Below, piece by piece: positions 55,527 through 63,887 of a DNA stretch of 64,000 nt (within the stretch, counting starts at the first letter, position 1; each line of letters opens with the position of its first letter). The stretch covers positions 2,480,001 to 2,544,000 of the forward strand of contig BQFW01000004.1 of NCBI GenBank assembly GCA_020891255.1, written 5' to 3'. The notes beneath the pieces are model-generated. The model was not told where the DNA came from, did no database searches, and was given only the letters and a program-made list of their open reading frames with translations. The translations under genes and the position numbers were made by a program. The stretch is from Entomortierella parvispora E1425 (taxonomy: Eukaryota > Fungi > Mortierellomycota).

Positions 55527-56063
55527 TTGGATTATACATAAATTACCTTCATCCTCTCCCCCCCCCCCCCAAGTTCTTTTTCAAACAACTACCGCTAGAC
55601 GGATGCCTTTTACTCTTCACACCTGAATAAATTGTCATGTCGAAGCAATACAAAGAGACATGTCCGATATGCACCAGGGTAGAAGATGATCAAAAGAAGA
55701 GTAGGGGGGAACGAAAAGAAAAAAGAGGCCAAAGGATGCCGAGAAAGACGCTCTAGGCAAGGCGGGAAGCGTCTTTATTCCATTCTGATCCAAGACTCCG
55801 GGAAGCACAAGAATGTCGTGGCGCGCACCACAGCGAATTGGAGAAAAGGGGGAGGGACAATGTCAGGTCTATGGAAGGTCTGTGCGTTGACTCTTTTTTT
55901 CTTTTCTTGGTGTTTTTGTCCACATTCCTTTTTTTTCCTTTCTTTTTCATTTTCCTCTTGTCATTGTGTTTCCATCAGCTCGACCACCTCGACTTTCGAC
56001 TAGATTCCCCTTCCACTCGCCCTTCATACCCGGAACTTGTACAGGACGTTAAAAAAACCAGCA

Positions 56064-57487
56064 ATGGTGCCTATGGTAGACAACAAGACTTGGTCCAACA
56101 ATACAAAGCTGGCTCAGGAGATGAAGGCTTCAGGACCCTCCTTATCAACCCGAAGGAGGACGTGGCATCTTGCGCCAGTTGCAATCATGTCGACCTTGGT
56201 AAGAAAAACACCTGCTGCGAATTCTCGCCGGATCATCTCAGTCCCCCACCCCCCACCCCCTCGGGAAAATTCAGGACCTCAAAAACTTCTTTTGCTAAAA
56301 CTGCTGCTTCTTGCACATCGACTGTTTAGATCCCAGCCTGTGTCTGGTTTATCCAACATGTCCTCCGAGGATCAGACAGTGGACGCTTCAGTGGCCGCCA
56401 TGGTGAGATTGATGTCATTCCCGGGATCCTCTCCTTCCGCCGTCTTGGCCTCAGTGACGACCTACCACCCTCACAAAAGGAGCTTTATAATCAAAAGGCA
56501 GAGGTTCATGACAACAGGCCCAGTCTGGTTCCGACATTGACTCTGGAATTCGAGGGAATTTCGCTCACGGTGGTCATCGTCTCCATCGTGGGTGTCTTTG
56601 CTTTTATCAAGGGCTGTCGAAAGTTGCTGCAATCGGTAAACACGAAACAAAAGAGATTCAACGATGCACGACGCCTTTTTTTTGCCCTTTTCCTCAACTC
56701 ACTCTACTCTTGTAATGCTTTGTTGTTGTTAGTACCTGATCTGTGTCATCATCACCGTCCTCATTCAAGCGAGCATCATGGTCCACCAGTTCCTGTTGAG
56801 CACACGATGGATTGATGACACCTTGGACCAGTCCTGGAATCGTGCCTATGAATCCGATCCAGAGCTGGTTATGGGCTTGCAGAACGAGGTAAGAAAAGAT
56901 ACATGCAATAGAAATGAAAGGAGAAGCGTATCGACGATTATGATCTCTTTTTTTTTATGCCTCCTTTCCACTTGGAAAAAAAAAAGACCTTGAAGCTCAA
57001 CTGCAACTCTTTTTTCCCCCCTTTTTTTTTTGACTTTCAAAAAAAAAAACAAGTTCAACTGTAGAGGATTCAACCATTTCCAGGATCGCGCCGTTGACTT
57101 TATTCATGGAGAAGATATGATAGACCACATGGCTCTGATGCCTTGCAGCGAGGTCTTGAAGGCAACGTTCGGCAAGCGAATGCGGCACTTGGGAACGGTC
57201 TTGCTTTGTATTCGTCTGATTCAGGTGAGAATGAACTCTCTATCTCCATCCACACCACCCAATGTCCACATGTCCTCCCGTGTGGTAGGAGTGCTTTTTT
57301 TCTGACCATCCTCTCTCTTGTCTATCTGCAGTTGGCCGGAGTACTTTCACTTGCAACCTTGATTGTGTACTTGTCAGACATGGATCAGGAAGACCGAGAA
57401 ATGGAGGAACAAGAACAGGAGCTCGCAGACGAGAAGGAGGTGCTTGTATCACTCACCCTGGATGTCAAACAGAACGACAAGCCATAA
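56064..57487 (+). CDS. Tetraspanin-like four-TM protein with divergent EC2, 5 exons
   Basis: Spliced TM1 WHLAPVAIMSTL|IPACVWFI; TM2 ISLTVVIVSIVGVFAFI; TM3 YLICVIITVLIQASIMV; EC2 LDQSWNRAYESDPELVMGLQNE|FNCRGF...PCSEVLK; TM4 LGTVLLCIRLIQ|LAGVLSLATLIVYL. Confidence 0.7.
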
Positions 57488-57647
57488 AAGTCGGTCCTCT
57501 CCCTCTCTCTCAATTAAAAACTTGTATAATAGCCTTGCATTTGACTTTGTGGAAATGATATTTTAATGTACATGGATGCAGGAAAGGAGAGGAAAGGAAA
57601 GGATATATCAGCACAAGGGCAAAAAGTATGGATTCAAGGATGGTTGT

Positions 57648-60600
57648 TCAAATCTCATGATCGGCCTCATTGCCATCATGGTCAAAGTAAGAAGGGGCTT
57701 TATCCTCATGGGGTGTATTGGCGCCACTGCCGCTCAGGATCCGCTCTGCGTCCGACAGTCGATGCTCCGCCACAAGAATGTTGGCGGTGCTAAATGTACT
57801 CAAGTAGAGCAGCTCGATACCTGCCTCCGTCAATGGACGGGCAACAGAGTGGATAATACCGAATTTGTCTATTTTGGGACAGAACAGTAGCAGACAACAT
57901 GGTGGTCAGCATGCCAGTCAGCGCACACCAAAAATAAAACAAGACAGAAACCAAGACTACCAAGGCCAAATCGATGCAAATCAAGCTGAATCAAGCGCAA
58001 TGGACAAGTATCCATGTCCATGAACAACTCGTGTTCCTCAAACTCATCCAAGATGTAGGTGTCCGTGATCATGGACACACACTCTGACGTCGCTGTGAAT
58101 GAAAAGAATCTGGGAGCATCGTGACTGGGCCTATCCAATGTTGTACACACGTCAGTTTCTCGCCATGTGGACGTGCTGCAGAGCAATTTTATCAAGAGCC
58201 GTCATCCTTACCCGCGACCTGACGTGACAGCCTCTTCCTTGACCTTGTCGTTGTAAAACAGTATCTTGATGATCTTCAGGATCCAGGGTTGATGTCCACC
58301 TTCCAAATCCGTGTTCAAGCCCACACACCGAAGATAGTTTTCTGGAAGCGTTCTGACAGCCTGCTGTCGAAGCTCAAATGCGGTGGTGGTGGTGGGTGAA
58401 GGTTTGTTGTCATCATAGTCGTCCATTTTCCCTTGGGACACCAATGGTCTTGTTTCCGATCCCTGTCGGCGACGTTGTGCTGCAAATATATCCAAAGGTA
58501 CAAGTTGTTTGACTGCATGGTGTGAAATAATGACTTCGCCCAGTCCGGCCATATGGCCCTCATCACCACTCGAATCCATCGATTCTGGTGGCGTCATCAA
58601 GGCGAGCTCAGTGAACCTATCCTTGTGATGGGCTGTGTTGTGTACTCTGTCCTGATGCTGGTGCAGTGCCTGCTCCCGGTGTTGCTGGCATTCTGAGGGA
58701 TCTTCTTCATGGCTTGCGTTCTTCTTGAACCGAACCTGATCTGGAATGGGTGTATCTGGGGGAGTGCTGATCTCCTCCTCATCTTGTGCCACATGAAGTC
58801 CGTGACTCGACAATGTCGTAAACACTACAGGAAGTCGGCTTTCTTGGACCTAGCAAATGAGATGTGCATTGCAATTGTGGTCAGATTTCGGATGGTCTTG
58901 GATCAGTTCGGGGCACGCAAAGGACATCCAAACACATGGGTAAAAAGTCGATGAGTATGATACTGTGACACTATGACACTTACGAAAAGTAGATCCGTTT
59001 GATAGGTACTCATGTAAAAGACCGAGACTAAAAATGAACAAAGAAGGAGATCCGGATCGAGAACCATAATTAGCAGGGTGCGGCGATGATAGGTAAAACA
59101 ACAACGGACGCTAGCGCGTGTGCGACATTGCAAAACCCAACAGTCGCCCCAAAGCACCGCGTTAGTGTGAACGGGTAAGAGAACATCACCCTTGTTCCCC
59201 ATTTTCTCTCGCCATAGAAGCAAGGACAAAACAAAACATAAACAAAAACAACAAACAGAGTTGCTCCACCCTCACTTTGACTCAAGCAGCTGAATAGCAC
59301 ACAGAAAAAAGAGTCAGAAAAAAAATTCCCGGCTGGCGGCCCTGGAATCTTCTCAAAGATAGAACTCTGTTTCCTTGTCAGAGATCCAGAGATTGATAAA
59401 AAGATCAAGGGTCCTCCTGTGCATCCATTGCTTGCATGCGAGCAAGCAAGACTGCAGTAGATGGATGATAGGGATCATTCGTGGGGAAAGTGGAGGGGAA
59501 GAGGTGGTTGTGCCAGGTGGACAGACGCACAGTTCCCTTGTTCAACATATCCGAATCAATATTGATGGATGATGGACGACAACAATGCAGGTCGATCGGG
59601 GAGACGGGTGTTTTGGGGGGGGTGTTCATCTTGCGCCCAAGAACAAAAAAAAAGCAAAGGGGAGGCTCAAAAGTCACTCAAAAACCACAACCGAGGCAAT
59701 GTTCATGTACCGCAGCCCAGGTCCTCAGCGTGGCCTCTATGGTTATTGCACTCTGTTGTCCTTTCTCCCTGCTTTGTCGAGTGTTGTGATGCATGGTTTG
59801 GTGTTCCCTGTTTCTCTTTTTGCTCTGTCGAAATGACACAAACGTTTGATGCAATGCAGTCTTTCCCCTTTCGACCCAAAACAATCAGGAAGATGGCAGC
59901 TGCACCTGCACCTGGCACCTGCACCTGGCACCTGCACCTGTTACTGGGTCACAAAGTATCCAATGAATGCAGGCGTGTCACCCCTCTCCTGCCTTTCCCT
60001 CCCTGCTACATCCCCTTCCCCCACTCCTCAACATCAGCGAATGGTAGACTTTGATCTAAAACAGACGTACCTCCGGCCTTGGCAAGAGGCTCGACAATTG
60101 TGCAGATTCTTGAAGAGTTGAAGGTATCATCTATCATCAATGGAAGAGACAGTACCTTTTAGCACTTTGGATGACTGGGTATCCTGGTCGCCAAGAGTCT
60201 AATTCTCTTTATCATGGTTTCGCTGGTTCTTGTTTGTCCAACTCACCATTATCAACCTGCAGAGCCCTGTAGATGGAGGCCGAGATTTCAAGCCCCGGAC
60301 AGAGGTCCTTTGGGAAATCTTTAACCAAGGCCTCTGCATCTCCAAAGATCGAGATCTCGAGCGAGTTATCAATGTAAGAGAAGAGTGGCTCTTCTTCCTC
60401 TTGCCGGTCCCTGTGAGAATGACTTGAGGCGAGAGATGAGAGCGATAGGGATGGAGAAACAAAATAAAAAGGAGTCAGCGACCTGCTATCCTGTATGTGA
60501 GTGCATGATGATGTATGGGTTGATGTGCGTGTGAGAGAGAGTTGTTTCTTCCTTGGACGCCAAACGACAACAACAAGCACAGGGAGGGCAGTTTTCCAGT

Positions 60601-60859
60601 TGGATGAATCTGCAGGTCCAGAAGCGTCTTTATGTTGTTGCTGCAGGATGGGCGCAAATGTGTTTTTTATTGGCGGGTAAAGCGATGGGCAAGGCCGTGA
60701 AGAGCTAGTGGCGTCCAAAAAAAAAACGGCTCTTCTAGACCCAAAGTACCTGTAGTCCCGGAAGAGGATATGTTTCAAGATCGCGTGGCTGCACAGCTCG
60801 AGATCTTCACGCGGGAACCGCAGGAGACGCAGTCTGTCAGGCAGTAATGAGACAGTCAT
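57648..60859 (-). CDS. CASTOR/GATSL-like protein with four ACT subdomains, 6 exons
   Basis: MTVSLLPDRLRLLRFPRE...HAILKHILF|...LFSYIDNSLEISIFGD; RICTIVEPLAKAG|VSVFYMSTYQTDLLF|VQE (human CASTOR1 VSVLMLSTYQTDFILVRE); WILKIIKILFY; FFSFTATSECVSMITD; DKFGIIHSVARPLTEAGIELLYLSTFSTANILV. Confidence 0.85.
59902..59940. repeat. Tandem 13-mer GCACCTGCACCTG x3 inside the ~1-kb intron of the CASTOR-like gene
   Basis: Three perfect copies containing six CACCTG/CAGGTG units. Confidence 0.95.
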
Positions 60860-61395
60860 GGATGCTGAGGGCAGAGGGAATCGTCCGGATAGAAGGGTGT
60901 GTGGGTGGGTTGGGTGGACAATATGGCAAGAAAAAACACCCGATCAAAGTACAAAAGTGTATCGCTGCTACGAGAGCGAGTGAGTACAAGGTGCCAGAGT
61001 TGCCAGGGGTGCTGGTGGAGTGAGAAGGTGGGACTTTGGGATGTGTGCTGTGTGCTGCGTGCTGTGCGTGAGGGACAGACGAGAAGGGGCAGGGGTGGAG
61101 TGGCAGAAGCAGAGGCGGTGAGTCAAGAAGACAGACTGTTGGTACAAGTAGGGGCTGGAGCTGTTGGGCGAAGGGGACAAAGAAGAGGAGAGCGAAGAAG
61201 AGCAAAGATGAGCAGAGAGGAGAAAACGAAGATTGGAGAGAAAAAAGGTTACTCACACCGTCATTTTTATTTTCCGGCATCTCTCCACGTGATGTTATTT
61301 GTCGGAGACGAGTCAGGAATCAGGATTGGATTCAGGCAGGATTCAGGCAGGACTCACGATGAAGTCACCTCCTTTGCCCTTTGCTGTTCAGCTGA

Positions 61396-63887
61396 TCAGA
61401 GCTTGGCCTCTCCGAACGTCAGACTCGACAAAGGCGACCCTTGCTGGGCAGGGCGAGCACGCGCATCTGCTAGGCCAAAGAGCATCTCCTTGTCCTGCTC
61501 GTAGCGATCTTCGTTACCAAGGGACTGAATCAAGTGGTCAACGCGACGGTCCAGTTGCTCACACCATCTCTGTGCCGAGATCCTATCGACCCTGGCTGCA
61601 GACGCCGCAACCGTATCTGAACTATTGGCACGGGCCTTGGCCTCCGACCAGGCAGAATGCTCGCAAAGCAAAGCTCCTGCGAATACGTCTGCCATCGCAA
61701 AAGTAAGACCTCTCGCAGATGCCTCCAGAACATTGCGGCCCTCCGCCGTGGCATAGGCTGTGAAGCGGATGGCAATCAAGACCAAACATTCCTCAAGGGC
61801 CTTGGCCGACTTCACCCACTGTTCTTGGTTCTTCAGAGGAGCCATGATCTCGCGAACGGTCTAAGTTTCAAAGTAAAAGAAAAGTAGGTTAGATGAAGGG
61901 CTCCTGCAGTGGAATGTGGTCTCTGGTAAAAAAAAGTGTACGCACCCGGCTATACAGCTCCAGCACCGATCCTCCAGTCTCGGCCATAACTCTCAGTACA
62001 TCCAAAGAAAGAACATTGGAAGTTCCCTCCCAGATGGTGTTCACCAAAACGTCTCTCATTGCGCGTCCAAGCCCGGTCTCCTCCATGTAACCCTGTCCTC
62101 CAAAAGCCTCCATGGCCTCCTGAGACATTGCAAATGCGTTCTTTGCGCTCCAGACTTTCAAAATGGGGGTCAAAAGTCGAAGGAGAGGAATGTCGCGTTC
62201 CTTCACTTGAGGAAGATTGTTGTCCAAGGACTCAGTTCTTCCCAACATCGCCACGCAATAGAACGTGAACTGGCTGGTGGCGCGGTACTGCAACTCCATG
62301 TTGGCGAGAGTCGCCAGATGAAGCGGCTGCTCCTTCAACAGCGCGCCAAACACCTAGAGATTGAAAGAGAAAGAGATCATTAGACACTTGACCGCCATCA
62401 CCTGTTCTTTCACTATGTCTTCGGTCTCATTTTTCCTCACCTCGCGACGGCGAGCATACTCCTTGGAGACCAGGACGAATCTTTGCATGGCAGACGTGCA
62501 AGACATGCCGCAATAGATACGGGTGATGTTCAAAATGGCTGAGATGTTCTTCACTCCTTTGTGCGTGGCGCCAACCTGCTGAGCAACCATGCCGTCCAAC
62601 TCGAGCTCGGCAGTGGGAAGTGCCTTGGTGCCCACTTTGTCCTTCAGGCGGTGAATGCGAACACCATTGAGCTTGCCCTCATTATCACGGACTCTGGCAA
62701 GATACAGAGACAAGCCCTTGCTACCATCCTTCATCGAACCAGCCGCCTTGGGGTCATGAGTACGGGCAAGAAGCATCGTAACATCGGCGTCTACAAGGAA
62801 GGGGAGGGGGGAAGGAGTGTAAGCGAAAGAAGAGAGGAGAGGCAAAGAACAAAAGAAGGCTTGCACACACACCTGTAGCACTTGAGAACCATTTGAATCC
62901 AGAGACCAACCAGGCCTTCTTTTCCTCGTTCCAAACGGCTTGAGTCTCTGTGCGCCCGACATCACTTCCGCCAGGACGCTCTGTCATCCACTGTCCGCTG
63001 GTGAAGAATCTCTTGGGGTCGCGACTAGTAAGTCGCGAGTACACCTGATCCTTCATATCCTGAGTTCCAATAAGCTCAATGACTCGAGCACATCCATCTA
63101 CGAGTAGGAGAACAAAGTTAGAAGATATCGATTGGGCCATTAAACGGGTCAGATCTCAGGTCTTCATACCAGTCATGGCAATTGGGCAACTGTAAAGTCC
63201 GGCACCAGCACTCCAGAGCATGAGCTTGGCCATCTGATAGATACGGGAGTACTGTCCGTACTTGCGTTCATAAGCGATAGCGACAACACCTTCGCGAGCT
63301 GCAATCTCTTTTTGTTTCTTCCATGACTCTGTAACCAAGAGTTCATCGACACGTCTAATGGGGCAGTCAGTGGTTAGAGAGAGAGAGAGAGAGTAGAGAT
63401 GGGCTTGTGCTCGACCTTCCAGGCTGCAGTTACCTGCACCAAGAGTCGTATTGGCGAAGTCTAGGCTGATCGGCCTCCATGCGATCGACGAGCGCTGCTC
63501 CCTCTGTGCAACAAGGATCGGAAGGAATGGAAAGGGACAATTAATTTTCTGTCACATGTCATTTGTGGAGAGGGTGCTGCGTGGGGAGAAATTGTGGCCA
63601 ACCGACGGAAGGGAAGAGTGGAGCAAGGGCTTGCTTACCGGTGTTGGCCCAGTCGCAGATATGAATAAGGTCGCTATTCAAGAGCACAGTGGACTGTTTA
63701 GACAAAGAGATTGACGGGCTTTGAGGTCAAGAATAGACTTGACGACCACTCACGAAGAGATATCCTGGAGAACATTGTCTGGGAGCAGTCTAGTCAAGAC
63801 GGAGACCATGACAGGGTCCTCGAGGAACGCGTTCTGGACCACAGGCACATCCTGCTTGAAGCCGACGTCTGCAGATGCAAAGACCAT
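61396..63887 (-). CDS. AidB/ACDH-11-like acyl-CoA dehydrogenase with C-terminal PTS1 (-AKL), multi-exon
   Basis: MVFASADVGFKQDVP...NAFLEDP; PRLRQYDSWCR|RVDELLVTESWKK; LYSCPIAMT|DGCAR; TSGQWMTERPGGSDV; IHRLKDKVGTKALPTAELEL; EAFGGQGYMEE; TIWEGTSNVL (catalytic Glu position); ends GEAKL*. Confidence 0.9.

What the first reader, a model, noticed from the sequence alone, without database searches (positions are those of the whole stretch)
57770..57860. The CASTOR homologue naturally carries the 'D304A' substitution, so it may sense a different ligand
Ungapped alignment of STFSTANILV with human STFNFDHALV puts Ala (codon at 57783-57785) at Asp304. That residue binds the arginine guanidinium, and its Ala mutant is known to lose Arg binding. 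The amino-acid-backbone contacts look retained: VSVF matches V110-S111-V112-L113 and GII matches G279-I280-V281. This predicts a pocket that still holds an amino acid but prefers a neutral or hydrophobic side chain, or a ligand-insensitive constitutive regulator.
Basis: partly seen in the sequence, partly recalled or inferred. Interest (0 to 1): 0.72.

Follow-up and report, generated by a model that had tools for sequence, protein, structure and literature searches.

The report
Fungal CASTOR paralogue lacking arginine-binding aspartate
This fungal gene encodes a relative of the human arginine sensor CASTOR1 with alanine in place of the arginine-gripping aspartate; the change marks an uncharacterised CASTOR subfamily found across fungi, and the same genome also has two CASTOR genes that keep the aspartate.

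Summary
Codon 57783-57785 (minus strand, GCC) encodes Ala428 of a seven-exon gene (60859..57648). The gene is identical to Entomortierella parvispora EMPS_03370 (P0105). Single-sequence HMMER, a fungal profile (E 1e-43) and an AlphaFold model superposed on CASTOR1 (Z 33, constant offset 124) all place Ala428 at human Asp304. They also place VSVF at V110-L113 and G-I-I at G279-V281.

- The Ala is not a peculiarity of this gene. It marks a subfamily I call F-type, seen in Mortierello-, Mucoro-, Chytridio-, Monoblepharo-, Blastocladio- and Basidiomycota (113/113 Agaricomycetes).
- It travels with H305N (invariant), E277K/R, F275L, F303T/S and L113F.
- This is not "the" CASTOR homologue. The same genome has two M-type paralogues (EMPS_08156, EMPS_09303) with GFDECGIV and Asp304 intact.
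- F-type keeps Ser111 and the Mios-contact residues Tyr118 and Asp121. The genome's Mios homologue keeps the Arg137 finger.

My best reading is a SEACAT/GATOR2-binding paralogue whose pocket is retuned away from arginine. The ligand is unknown, and a ligand-independent regulator remains a strong rival. Nothing here is biochemical.

The parts
57648..60859 (-). Whole gene: seven exons encoding a 472-aa four-ACT CASTOR-family protein (F-type), identical to Entomortierella parvispora EMPS_03370 (P0105)
   Evidence: All introns are GT-AG and the spliced translation equals P0105 exactly. Pfam: ACT_7 x2 at 81.4 bits, CASTOR1_ACT-like at 29.2 bits.
60750..60859 (-). Exon 1 (residues 1-37, start of ACT1)
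60247..60422 (-). Exon 2 (residues 37-96). A second in-frame acceptor lies at 60410, 12 nt downstream, which would remove S-H-S-H.
60071..60130 (-). Exon 3 (residues 96-116; ACT2 loop and helix, including the subfamily-specific Arg103)
58984..59027 (-). Exon 4 (residues 116-130): VSVF (Ser117 = human Ser111, codon 59025-59023) and STYQTD (Tyr124 = Tyr118 at 59004-59002; Asp127 = Asp121 at 58995-58993)
58212..58849 (-). Exon 5 (residues 131-343): end of ACT2, a roughly 130-residue disordered linker and the start of ACT3
58385..58777 (-). Disordered linker, residues 155-285 (pLDDT 40-68), with the proline-directed motifs TPPDTPIPD (58765-58739) and MTPPES (58597-58580)
57961..58130 (-). Exon 6 (residues 343-400): ACT3 end and ACT4 strand 1, with the subfamily-specific Gln391 and Asp393 (57982-57980) and the start of the lid loop F-G-L-D
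57648..57868 (-). Exon 7 (residues 400-472 plus stop): ACT4 core
57852..57866 (-). K-F-G-I-I: Lys401 (= human Glu277, charge reversed; codon 57866-57864), Gly403 (= Gly279), Ile404 and Ile405 (= Ile280, Val281)
57771..57800 (-). Hairpin S-T-F-S-T-A-N-I-L-V, equivalent to human S299-V308
57783..57785 (-). Ala428 codon (GCC), at the position of human Asp304
57780..57782 (-). Asn429 codon (AAC), at the position of human His305; invariant in every F-type protein examined

Best explanation
The gene encodes an 'F-type' CASTOR, a paralogous subfamily of the four-ACT CASTOR family that is inherited vertically across Fungi. It keeps the CASTOR fold and the residues that hold the backbone of a bound alpha-amino acid (Ser111, Gly279, and the main chain at 112 and 279-281). 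It also keeps the two CASTOR1 residues that contact the Mios beta-propeller of GATOR2/SEACAT (Tyr118, and Asp121, which accepts the Mios Arg137 finger). The sub-pocket that recognises the arginine guanidinium is rebuilt and then frozen: Asp304 to Ala, His305 to Asn, Phe303 to Thr/Ser, Phe275 to Leu, Leu113 to Phe, and lid residue Glu277 to Lys/Arg. The protein therefore cannot recognise arginine the way CASTOR1 does. It most likely acts as a SEACAT-binding regulator of TORC1 that answers to a different small ligand. The canonical CASTOR1-like pocket is kept by two M-type paralogues in the same genome. Shown here: the sequence, the register, the fold, the subfamily structure and the paralogues. 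Inferred only: Mios binding, ligand binding and any effect on TORC1.
For: Register and fold. Loss of arginine binding in D304A/D304L, and stronger GATOR2 binding by D304A: PMC5187391, PMC5020642. Subfamily signature: every named fungal homologue has A-N (or S-N) at 304/305 and K/R at 277. In Agaricomycetes, 113/113 have A-N and 112/113 have Lys. Position 304 allows only A/S in F-type but D/A/G/S/T/E in M-type, so the constraint is tighter, not relaxed. In the tree the F|M split has SH-aLRT 100, and still 100 with the pocket columns removed. Branching inside F follows fungal phyla. Paralogues with an intact pocket: P0160 and P0158 (GFDECGIV, STF[NS]SDYIMV, NVSIM) on G000 contigs C11 and C13. 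They match CASTOR2/1 at E 1e-40/1e-33, against about 1e-16 for P0105. Partner side: Tyr124 is nearly invariant (90% or more of rows) and Asp127 invariant in F-type. A Mios homologue is present and keeps R-H-x-R and K-x-R-x-D, equivalent to human K111-R114 and K135-D139 including Arg137. The roles of Arg137, Asp121 and Tyr118 come from PMC12507694.
Against: There are no binding data of any kind. CASTOR2 keeps the whole pocket yet is arginine-insensitive in cells (PMC5020642), so pocket conservation does not prove sensing. The subfamily-specific acid/base pairs flanking both loops (Asp94...Arg103 and Asp393...Lys401) could be structural latches rather than ligand contacts. Four backbone carbonyls that bind the guanidinium are presumably still present, so a cationic ligand is not excluded. 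No RNA run was listed, so expression is unconfirmed.
Confidence: 0.45

Rival explanations
1. Ligand-independent regulator. In this reading the F-type pocket binds no small molecule. Either the protein behaves like CASTOR1-D304A or CASTOR2 and binds SEACAT constitutively, or the lid Lys/Arg401 occupies or latches the pocket and locks one conformation. Regulation would then come from expression level, from phosphorylation of the long Ser/Thr/Pro-rich linker, or from pairing with the M-type paralogues.
For: D304A binds GATOR2 more strongly and is used to trap the complex (PMC5187391; PMC12507694). CASTOR2 is arginine-insensitive despite a conserved pocket. F-type has paired subfamily-specific charges at both ends of the ACT2 and ACT4 loops. 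It also has a 130-residue disordered linker with conserved TP/SP motifs.
Against: The invariance of Ser117, Gly403, Ala428 and Asn429 across many fungal phyla is stricter than fold maintenance needs, since M-type proteins tolerate D/A/G/S/T/E at 304. Self-insertion of Lys401 cannot be checked without coordinates.
Confidence: 0.3
2. It still senses arginine or another basic amino acid. The carbonyl cage (residues 398, 424, 425, 427) together with another acid, such as the subfamily-specific Asp393 or the conserved Asp400, would replace Asp304.
For: Four of the five guanidinium hydrogen bonds in CASTOR1 come from main-chain carbonyls (PMC5020642). Asp393 is present in 32/41 diverse F-type proteins and in 110 of 112 Agaricomycetes (the other two are gapped at this column).
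Against: D304A and D304L alone abolish binding in CASTOR1. The lid gains a positive charge (E277K/R), which disfavours a cationic ligand. The genome already has two paralogues with the canonical arginine pocket.
Confidence: 0.1
3. F-type proteins have left the TORC1 pathway and use the four-ACT scaffold for an unrelated regulatory job. The conserved Tyr/Asp patch would then serve another partner.
For: The stem branch separating F from M is long (0.75-1.05 changes per column). Gln119 is replaced by Met/Leu in Agaricomycetes. Castor1_N scores below its Pfam cut-off (19.8 against 26.5 bits).
Against: Asp121 is invariant and Tyr118 nearly so, and the Mios finger residues are conserved in the same genome. 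The whole-protein superposition on GATOR2-bound CASTOR1 gives Z 28-31.
Confidence: 0.12

Closest known systems
Human CASTOR1 (GATSL3), cytosolic arginine sensor; PDB 5I2C, 5GS9, 5GT7, 9OTI
   Same: Four tandem ACT domains in the same order and fold (Z 33, rmsd about 3 A over about 290 residues). Ser111, Gly279 and Ile280 are shared, as are the S-T hairpin and the Tyr118/Asp121 Mios-contact residues.
   Different: Asp304 is Ala, His305 is Asn, Glu277 is Lys, Phe275 is Leu, Phe303 is Thr, Leu113 is Phe and Leu273 is Phe. A 130-residue disordered insert lies between ACT2 and ACT3. Sequence identity is only about 25%. It falls on the other side of the F|M split in the family tree.
Human CASTOR2 (GATSL2); PDB 9KPB, 9KPG
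   Same: A CASTOR paralogue that coexists with an arginine-responsive one. Phe at the Leu113 position (Phe115 in CASTOR2) is shared with F-type. It is the best single-sequence PDB match of P0105 (E 4.8e-17).
   Different: CASTOR2 keeps Asp304 and the rest of the pocket. It arose within animals on the M-type side and is not orthologous to F-type.
Engineered CASTOR1 D304A; chains 9LVK_U, 9OTI_U
   Same: Ala at position 304. These are the top-scoring PDB chains for the last exon.
   Different: A single laboratory substitution in an otherwise arginine-tuned pocket. F-type carries at least six further fixed pocket and lid changes.
M-type CASTOR paralogues of the same genome: EMPS_08156 (P0160) and EMPS_09303 (P0158)
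   Same: Same architecture, including a long linker, and the same organism.
   Different: They keep GFDECGIV, Asp304 and Ser111. They pass all three CASTOR Pfam models strongly and group with holozoan and amoebozoan CASTORs.
ACT regulatory domains of aspartate kinase (for example 3L76) and two-ACT ACT_7 proteins (1ZHV, 1ZVP)
   Same: Paired ACT domains with a ligand site at the domain interface (Z 14 and 12).
   Different: No kinase domain is attached. The match is far weaker than to CASTOR.

Membership tests
CASTOR family (four tandem ACT domains; Pfam PF13840 + PF21389 + PF18700) | Four-ACT fold superposable on CASTOR1/2 | tested here: met
   AlphaFold2 model pTM 0.73. VIA-align Z 28-33 and Foldseek E 3e-20 to CASTOR1/2. 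The next family, aspartate kinase, scores Z 14.
CASTOR family (four tandem ACT domains; Pfam PF13840 + PF21389 + PF18700) | Significant full-length sequence homology | tested here: met
   Fungal profile against CASTOR1 gives E 1.9e-43 over residues 1-146 and 179-325. P0105 alone gives E about 1e-16.
CASTOR family (four tandem ACT domains; Pfam PF13840 + PF21389 + PF18700) | Pfam models above their gathering scores | tested here: inconclusive
   ACT_7 scores 81.4 bits (cut-off 27) and CASTOR1_ACT-like 29.2 (cut-off 27), so both pass. Castor1_N scores 19.8, below its cut-off of 26.5.
CASTOR family (four tandem ACT domains; Pfam PF13840 + PF21389 + PF18700) | GATOR2/Mios-contact residues Tyr118 and Asp121 | tested here: met
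   Tyr124 and Asp127 are present and are respectively nearly invariant and invariant in F-type. Actual binding was not tested.
CASTOR family (four tandem ACT domains; Pfam PF13840 + PF21389 + PF18700) | Homodimerisation and binding to GATOR2/SEACAT | not testable with these tools
   Mios is available only as separate exons, so no complex job was sent.
CASTOR1-type arginine sensor | Acidic side chain at position 304 that pairs with the guanidinium | tested here: not met
   Ala428 by sequence, profile and structural register.
CASTOR1-type arginine sensor | Ser111 hydroxyl and the 279-281 main chain that hold the alpha-amino acid moiety | tested here: met
   Ser117, Gly403, Ile404 and Ile405 are present.
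CASTOR1-type arginine sensor | Hydrophobic lining: Leu113, Leu273, Phe275, Ile280, Val281, Phe303 | tested here: inconclusive
   The equivalents are Phe, Phe, Leu, Ile, Ile and Thr. The lining is still mostly hydrophobic, but four of six differ and Phe303 becomes polar.
CASTOR1-type arginine sensor | Micromolar arginine binding and arginine-triggered release from GATOR2 | not testable with these tools
   These need ITC or thermal shift and pull-downs.
M-type CASTOR clade (Holozoa, Amoebozoa, Mortierellomycota paralogues) | Placement on the M side of the family tree | tested here: not met
   P0105 sits in the F clade. The split has SH-aLRT 100 with and without the pocket columns.

The most novel reading that the evidence does not exclude
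F-type CASTORs are cytosolic sensors for a non-basic nitrogen signal, for example glutamine, glutamate or another neutral or acidic amino acid. They would feed into SEACAT-TORC1 in most non-yeast fungi. That would be a nutrient input missing from the yeast-based picture, working beside M-type arginine sensors where both exist. The net charge change of the pocket (loss of Asp304 plus Glu277 to Lys/Arg) would then be the specificity switch.
Probability: 0.15. Interest if true: 0.85.

Novelty: new variant of a known kind. Interest (0 to 1): 0.58.

Why it matters
Reviews of mTORC1 sensing state that CASTOR1 homologues were lost in fungi (PMC10957897). A 2025 survey typed fungal CASTORs only by Pfam domain presence and read them as potential arginine sensing, with both copies lost in Dikarya (PMC11836306). 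Residue-level analysis here changes that picture in three ways.
- Fungi carry a distinct, strongly conserved CASTOR subfamily whose pocket cannot be a CASTOR1-type arginine site.
- That subfamily is widespread in mushroom-forming Basidiomycota, including tractable species such as Coprinopsis cinerea, Schizophyllum commune and Pleurotus ostreatus.
- At least Mortierellomycota also keep canonical CASTOR1-like genes.

This gives a natural specificity-switch pair that can be tested directly. It also warns against calling fungal CASTOR hits 'arginine sensors' on domain presence alone.

Tried and rejected
- A remembered lead that yeast YGR127W is a CASTOR homologue was wrong. Papers describe it as the TANGO2 homologue, so I dropped it.
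- Exons 2 and 6 searched alone against the PDB found nothing. Only the last exon and the profile are informative.
- No RNA sequencing run was listed for the gene. The splice model therefore rests on GT-AG sites and on exact identity to the deposited protein.
- Rfam found nothing at 56000-62000, including the 1,043-nt intron.
- Saxton et al. 2016 (PMC4988899) is not held. Pocket facts come from Gai 2016 and Xia 2016.
- The taxa of ten unnamed metagenomic M-type proteins could not be recovered. Two 'STASAAN' variants trace only to unnamed NCBI assemblies GCA_027600665.1 and GCA_027604005.1.
- Joined spliced model: exons were joined only inside local scripts, to compare with database proteins. 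No typed joined sequence was sent to any search tool. The identical database protein P0105 was used instead.
- No complex-prediction job was sent. The Mios propeller is available only as separate exons, and joining them was left out.
On the tree it is essentially one event.
- Whether Asn429 faces the pocket could not be decided without coordinates.
Full report
**1. What is in the window.**
The finding lies in the last exon of a minus-strand gene with seven exons:
- 60859-60750
- 60422-60247
- 60130-60071
- 59027-58984
- 58849-58212
- 58130-57961
- 57868-57648

All introns are GT-AG. The spliced translation is letter for letter the deposited protein P0105, 'hypothetical protein EMPS_03370 [Entomortierella parvispora]', 472 aa. 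UniRef names it 'CASTOR ACT domain-containing protein'. A second in-frame acceptor 12 nt downstream (60410) would remove four residues. The genome is therefore that species' assembly, a member of Mortierellomycota.

**2.
- Window 57800-57771 encodes S-T-F-S-T-A-N-I-L-V, with Ala428 at 57785-57783.
- HMMER aligns the exon without gaps to CASTOR1 276-318. The engineered D304A chains score best because they share the Ala.
- A profile of 35 fungal homologues aligns to CASTOR1 over both halves at E 1.9e-43 in the same register.
- An AlphaFold2 model built from a 68-sequence alignment has mean pLDDT 78.5, with the structured core mostly above 90 and residues 155-285 disordered.
- The model superposes on CASTOR1 and CASTOR2 at Z 28-33 and rmsd 2.6-3.1 A. 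The C-terminal end points always differ by 124 residues, so 428 corresponds to 304.
- The literature facts are correct. D304A and D304L abolish arginine binding by ITC, and D304A binds GATOR2 more strongly (PMC5187391; PMC5020642).

**3. The Ala is a subfamily signature, not a quirk.**
An exhaustive HMMER search with the last exon and two word searches gave about 370 family members. They fall into two types.

| Feature | F-type | M-type |
|---|---|---|
| Lid loop | G-L-D-[KR]-x-G | G-F-x-E-x-G |
| Hairpin | S-T-x-x-[TS]-A-N-x-L-V | S-T-x-x-[TS]-D-[YFH]-x-L-V |

- Named F-type proteins come from these groups:
  - Mortierellomycota
  - Mucoromycota (Umbelopsis, Phycomyces, Spinellus, Choanephora)
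  - Calcarisporiella
  - Spizellomycetales
  - Gonapodya
  - Paraphysoderma (Blastocladiomycota)
  - Basidiomycota (Meredithblackwellia and more than 100 Agaricomycetes)
- Named M-type proteins come from Capsaspora, a sea urchin, Amoebozoa and Mortierellomycota.
- Counting ACT4 domains: Glu277 with Asp304 occurs 110 times and Lys/Arg277 with Ala304 occurs 79 times. Mixed states are few.
- In Agaricomycetes, 113/113 have A-N and 112/113 have Lys277.
- Asn at 305 is invariant in F-type.
- Further subfamily-specific columns are F275L, L113F, F303T/S, Trp-to-Leu at P0105 position 387, and acid/base pairs flanking both ligand loops: Asp94...Arg103 in ACT2 and Gln391-x-Asp393...Lys401 in ACT4.
- Within M-type, Asp304 has been replaced independently several times, for example A-H in Arcella, and G, S, T or E elsewhere. 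Position 304 is thus more tightly fixed in F-type than in M-type.

**4. The same genome keeps two canonical CASTOR genes.**
A six-frame Pfam ACT_7 scan of G000 found six places:
- this gene;
- two aspartokinases;
- a short two-ACT protein;
- two further four-ACT genes, on C11 and C13.

The last two are annotated EMPS_08156 (P0160, 482 aa) and EMPS_09303 (P0158, 430 aa). They carry N-V-S-I-M (Ser111 kept), P-L-G-F-D-E-C-G-I-V (identical to human 272-281) and S-T-F-[NS]-S-D-Y-I-M-V (Asp304 kept). P0158 matches CASTOR2 and CASTOR1 at E 1.5e-40 and 1.2e-33, against 4.8e-17 and 1.6e-16 for P0105. Both pass all three CASTOR Pfam models, whereas P0105 passes Castor1_N at only 19.8 bits. Most Mortierellomycota genomes show the same set of genes.

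**5. Phylogeny.**
- A maximum-likelihood tree of 58 proteins splits F from M with SH-aLRT 100.
- A second tree of 41 proteins, with the pocket, lid and VSVF columns removed, gives the same split at 100.
- The Mortierellomycota M-type genes sit on the M side with Holozoa and Amoebozoa.
- Inside F the groups follow fungal phyla: zoosporic fungi, Mucoromycota sensu lato including Mortierellomycota, and Basidiomycota.
- F-type was therefore already present in the common ancestor of these fungal phyla.
- The root is not inferred. I cannot say whether F arose by duplication in early fungi or earlier.
- Asp is the state shared by the non-fungal groups and by the homologous ACT2 hairpin (Asp121), so Ala is most simply the derived state.

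**6. What the protein probably does.**
In CASTOR1 only two side chains make polar contacts with the ligand: Ser111 with the alpha-amino group and Asp304 with the guanidinium. The remaining contacts are main chain (112, 277, 279-281; 274, 300, 301, 303) and hydrophobic (PMC5020642).
- F-type keeps Ser111, Gly279 and the surrounding sequence. A site for an alpha-amino acid backbone is therefore plausible.
- The side-chain end loses its only acid, and the lid gains a base.
- On the opposite face, CASTOR1 Asp121 accepts Mios Arg137 and Tyr118 contacts the neighbouring Mios loop (PMC12507694).
- Asp121 is invariant and Tyr118 nearly invariant in F-type.
- G000 has a Mios homologue on contig C2. One of its exons aligns to human MIOS 107-147 with R-H-S-R for K111-R114 and K-V-R-N-D for K135-D139. 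The Arg137 finger is therefore present.

I commit to a SEACAT-binding regulator retuned to a non-arginine ligand, at confidence 0.45. The rivals are:
- a ligand-independent or self-latched regulator (0.30);
- a residual basic-amino-acid sensor using Asp393 or Asp400 (0.10);
- a function outside TORC1 (0.12).

All functional steps are inferred.

**7. Relation to the literature.**
I found no paper describing this subfamily or the 304 column in fungi. PMC11836306 typed fungal 'Castor1' and 'Castor2' by PF18700 and PF21389. [quoted passage not shown] By those criteria P0105 would count as 'Castor2', and the Agaricus protein (ACT_7 only) as neither. PMC10957897 states that CASTOR1 homologues were lost in fungi. 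The ESM Atlas also points to CASTOR-ACT clusters dominated by Ascomycota, which I could not examine.

**8. Verdict.**
This is a new variant of a known kind: a conserved pan-fungal CASTOR paralogue with a rebuilt ligand pocket. It is interesting mainly because it is directly testable and because it corrects domain-based calls of 'arginine sensor' in fungi.

Noticed in passing
G000:C11:1371500-1379500 (L008) and G000:C13:258500-266500 (L009): Two further four-ACT CASTOR genes (EMPS_08156 and EMPS_09303). Their pocket is almost identical to human CASTOR1 (GFDECGIV, Asp304, Ser111), but their ACT2 patch reads S-T-Y-D-A-D instead of S-T-Y-Q-T-D.
   Followed up: yes
G000:C12:2287251-2287427 (L002): A short two-ACT ACT_7 protein (about 130-140 aa, motif S-T-Y-D-T-D-Y-I-L-V) that resembles the bacterial Atu0741/VC0802 type. 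Its function is unknown.
   Followed up: no
window 59028-60070: Intron 3 is 1,043 nt, against 81-327 nt for the other five introns, and it splits the Val116 codon just before Ser117. Rfam found nothing and I saw no convincing ORF. I did not look for a mobile element or a regulatory element.
   Followed up: partly
window 60410-60422: Two in-frame AG acceptors lie 12 nt apart for intron 1. The deposited model uses 60422 and so adds S-H-S-H. No RNA data were available to choose between them.
   Followed up: partly
window 58739-58765 and 58580-58597: The proline-directed motifs TPPDTPIPD and MTPPES lie in the disordered ACT2-ACT3 linker. TPPDTPIPD is conserved among the Mortierellomycota orthologues aligned; MTPPES recurs only as (M/V)TPP-S in two of them. 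They are possible phosphorylation sites.
   Followed up: partly
P0139 and 263 further hits: F-type CASTOR genes are widespread in Agaricomycetes (Agaricales, Boletales, Polyporales, Russulales). This contradicts a published statement that Dikarya lost both CASTOR copies. In these proteins the ACT2 patch reads S-S-Y-[ML]-S-D.
   Followed up: partly
ESM Atlas clusters: Three 'CASTOR ACT domain-containing protein' clusters of 97-185 members are dominated by Ascomycota (feature score 0.91); the two that also appear in the structure search align to the model at TM 0.72-0.73. Their residues at 277, 304 and 305 were not examined.
   Followed up: no
P0018/P0140 (Arcella) and several unnamed M-type proteins: Asp304 has been lost independently inside the M-type clade (A-H, G-H, G-F, S-Y, T-I) or changed to Glu. 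Ligand specificity in the wider CASTOR family may therefore vary repeatedly.
   Followed up: partly
P0111 (Mortierella polycephala, 650 aa): This annotated protein combines a tetraspanin domain (PF00335) with ACT_7. It is probably a gene-model fusion with a neighbouring gene, but I did not check.
   Followed up: no
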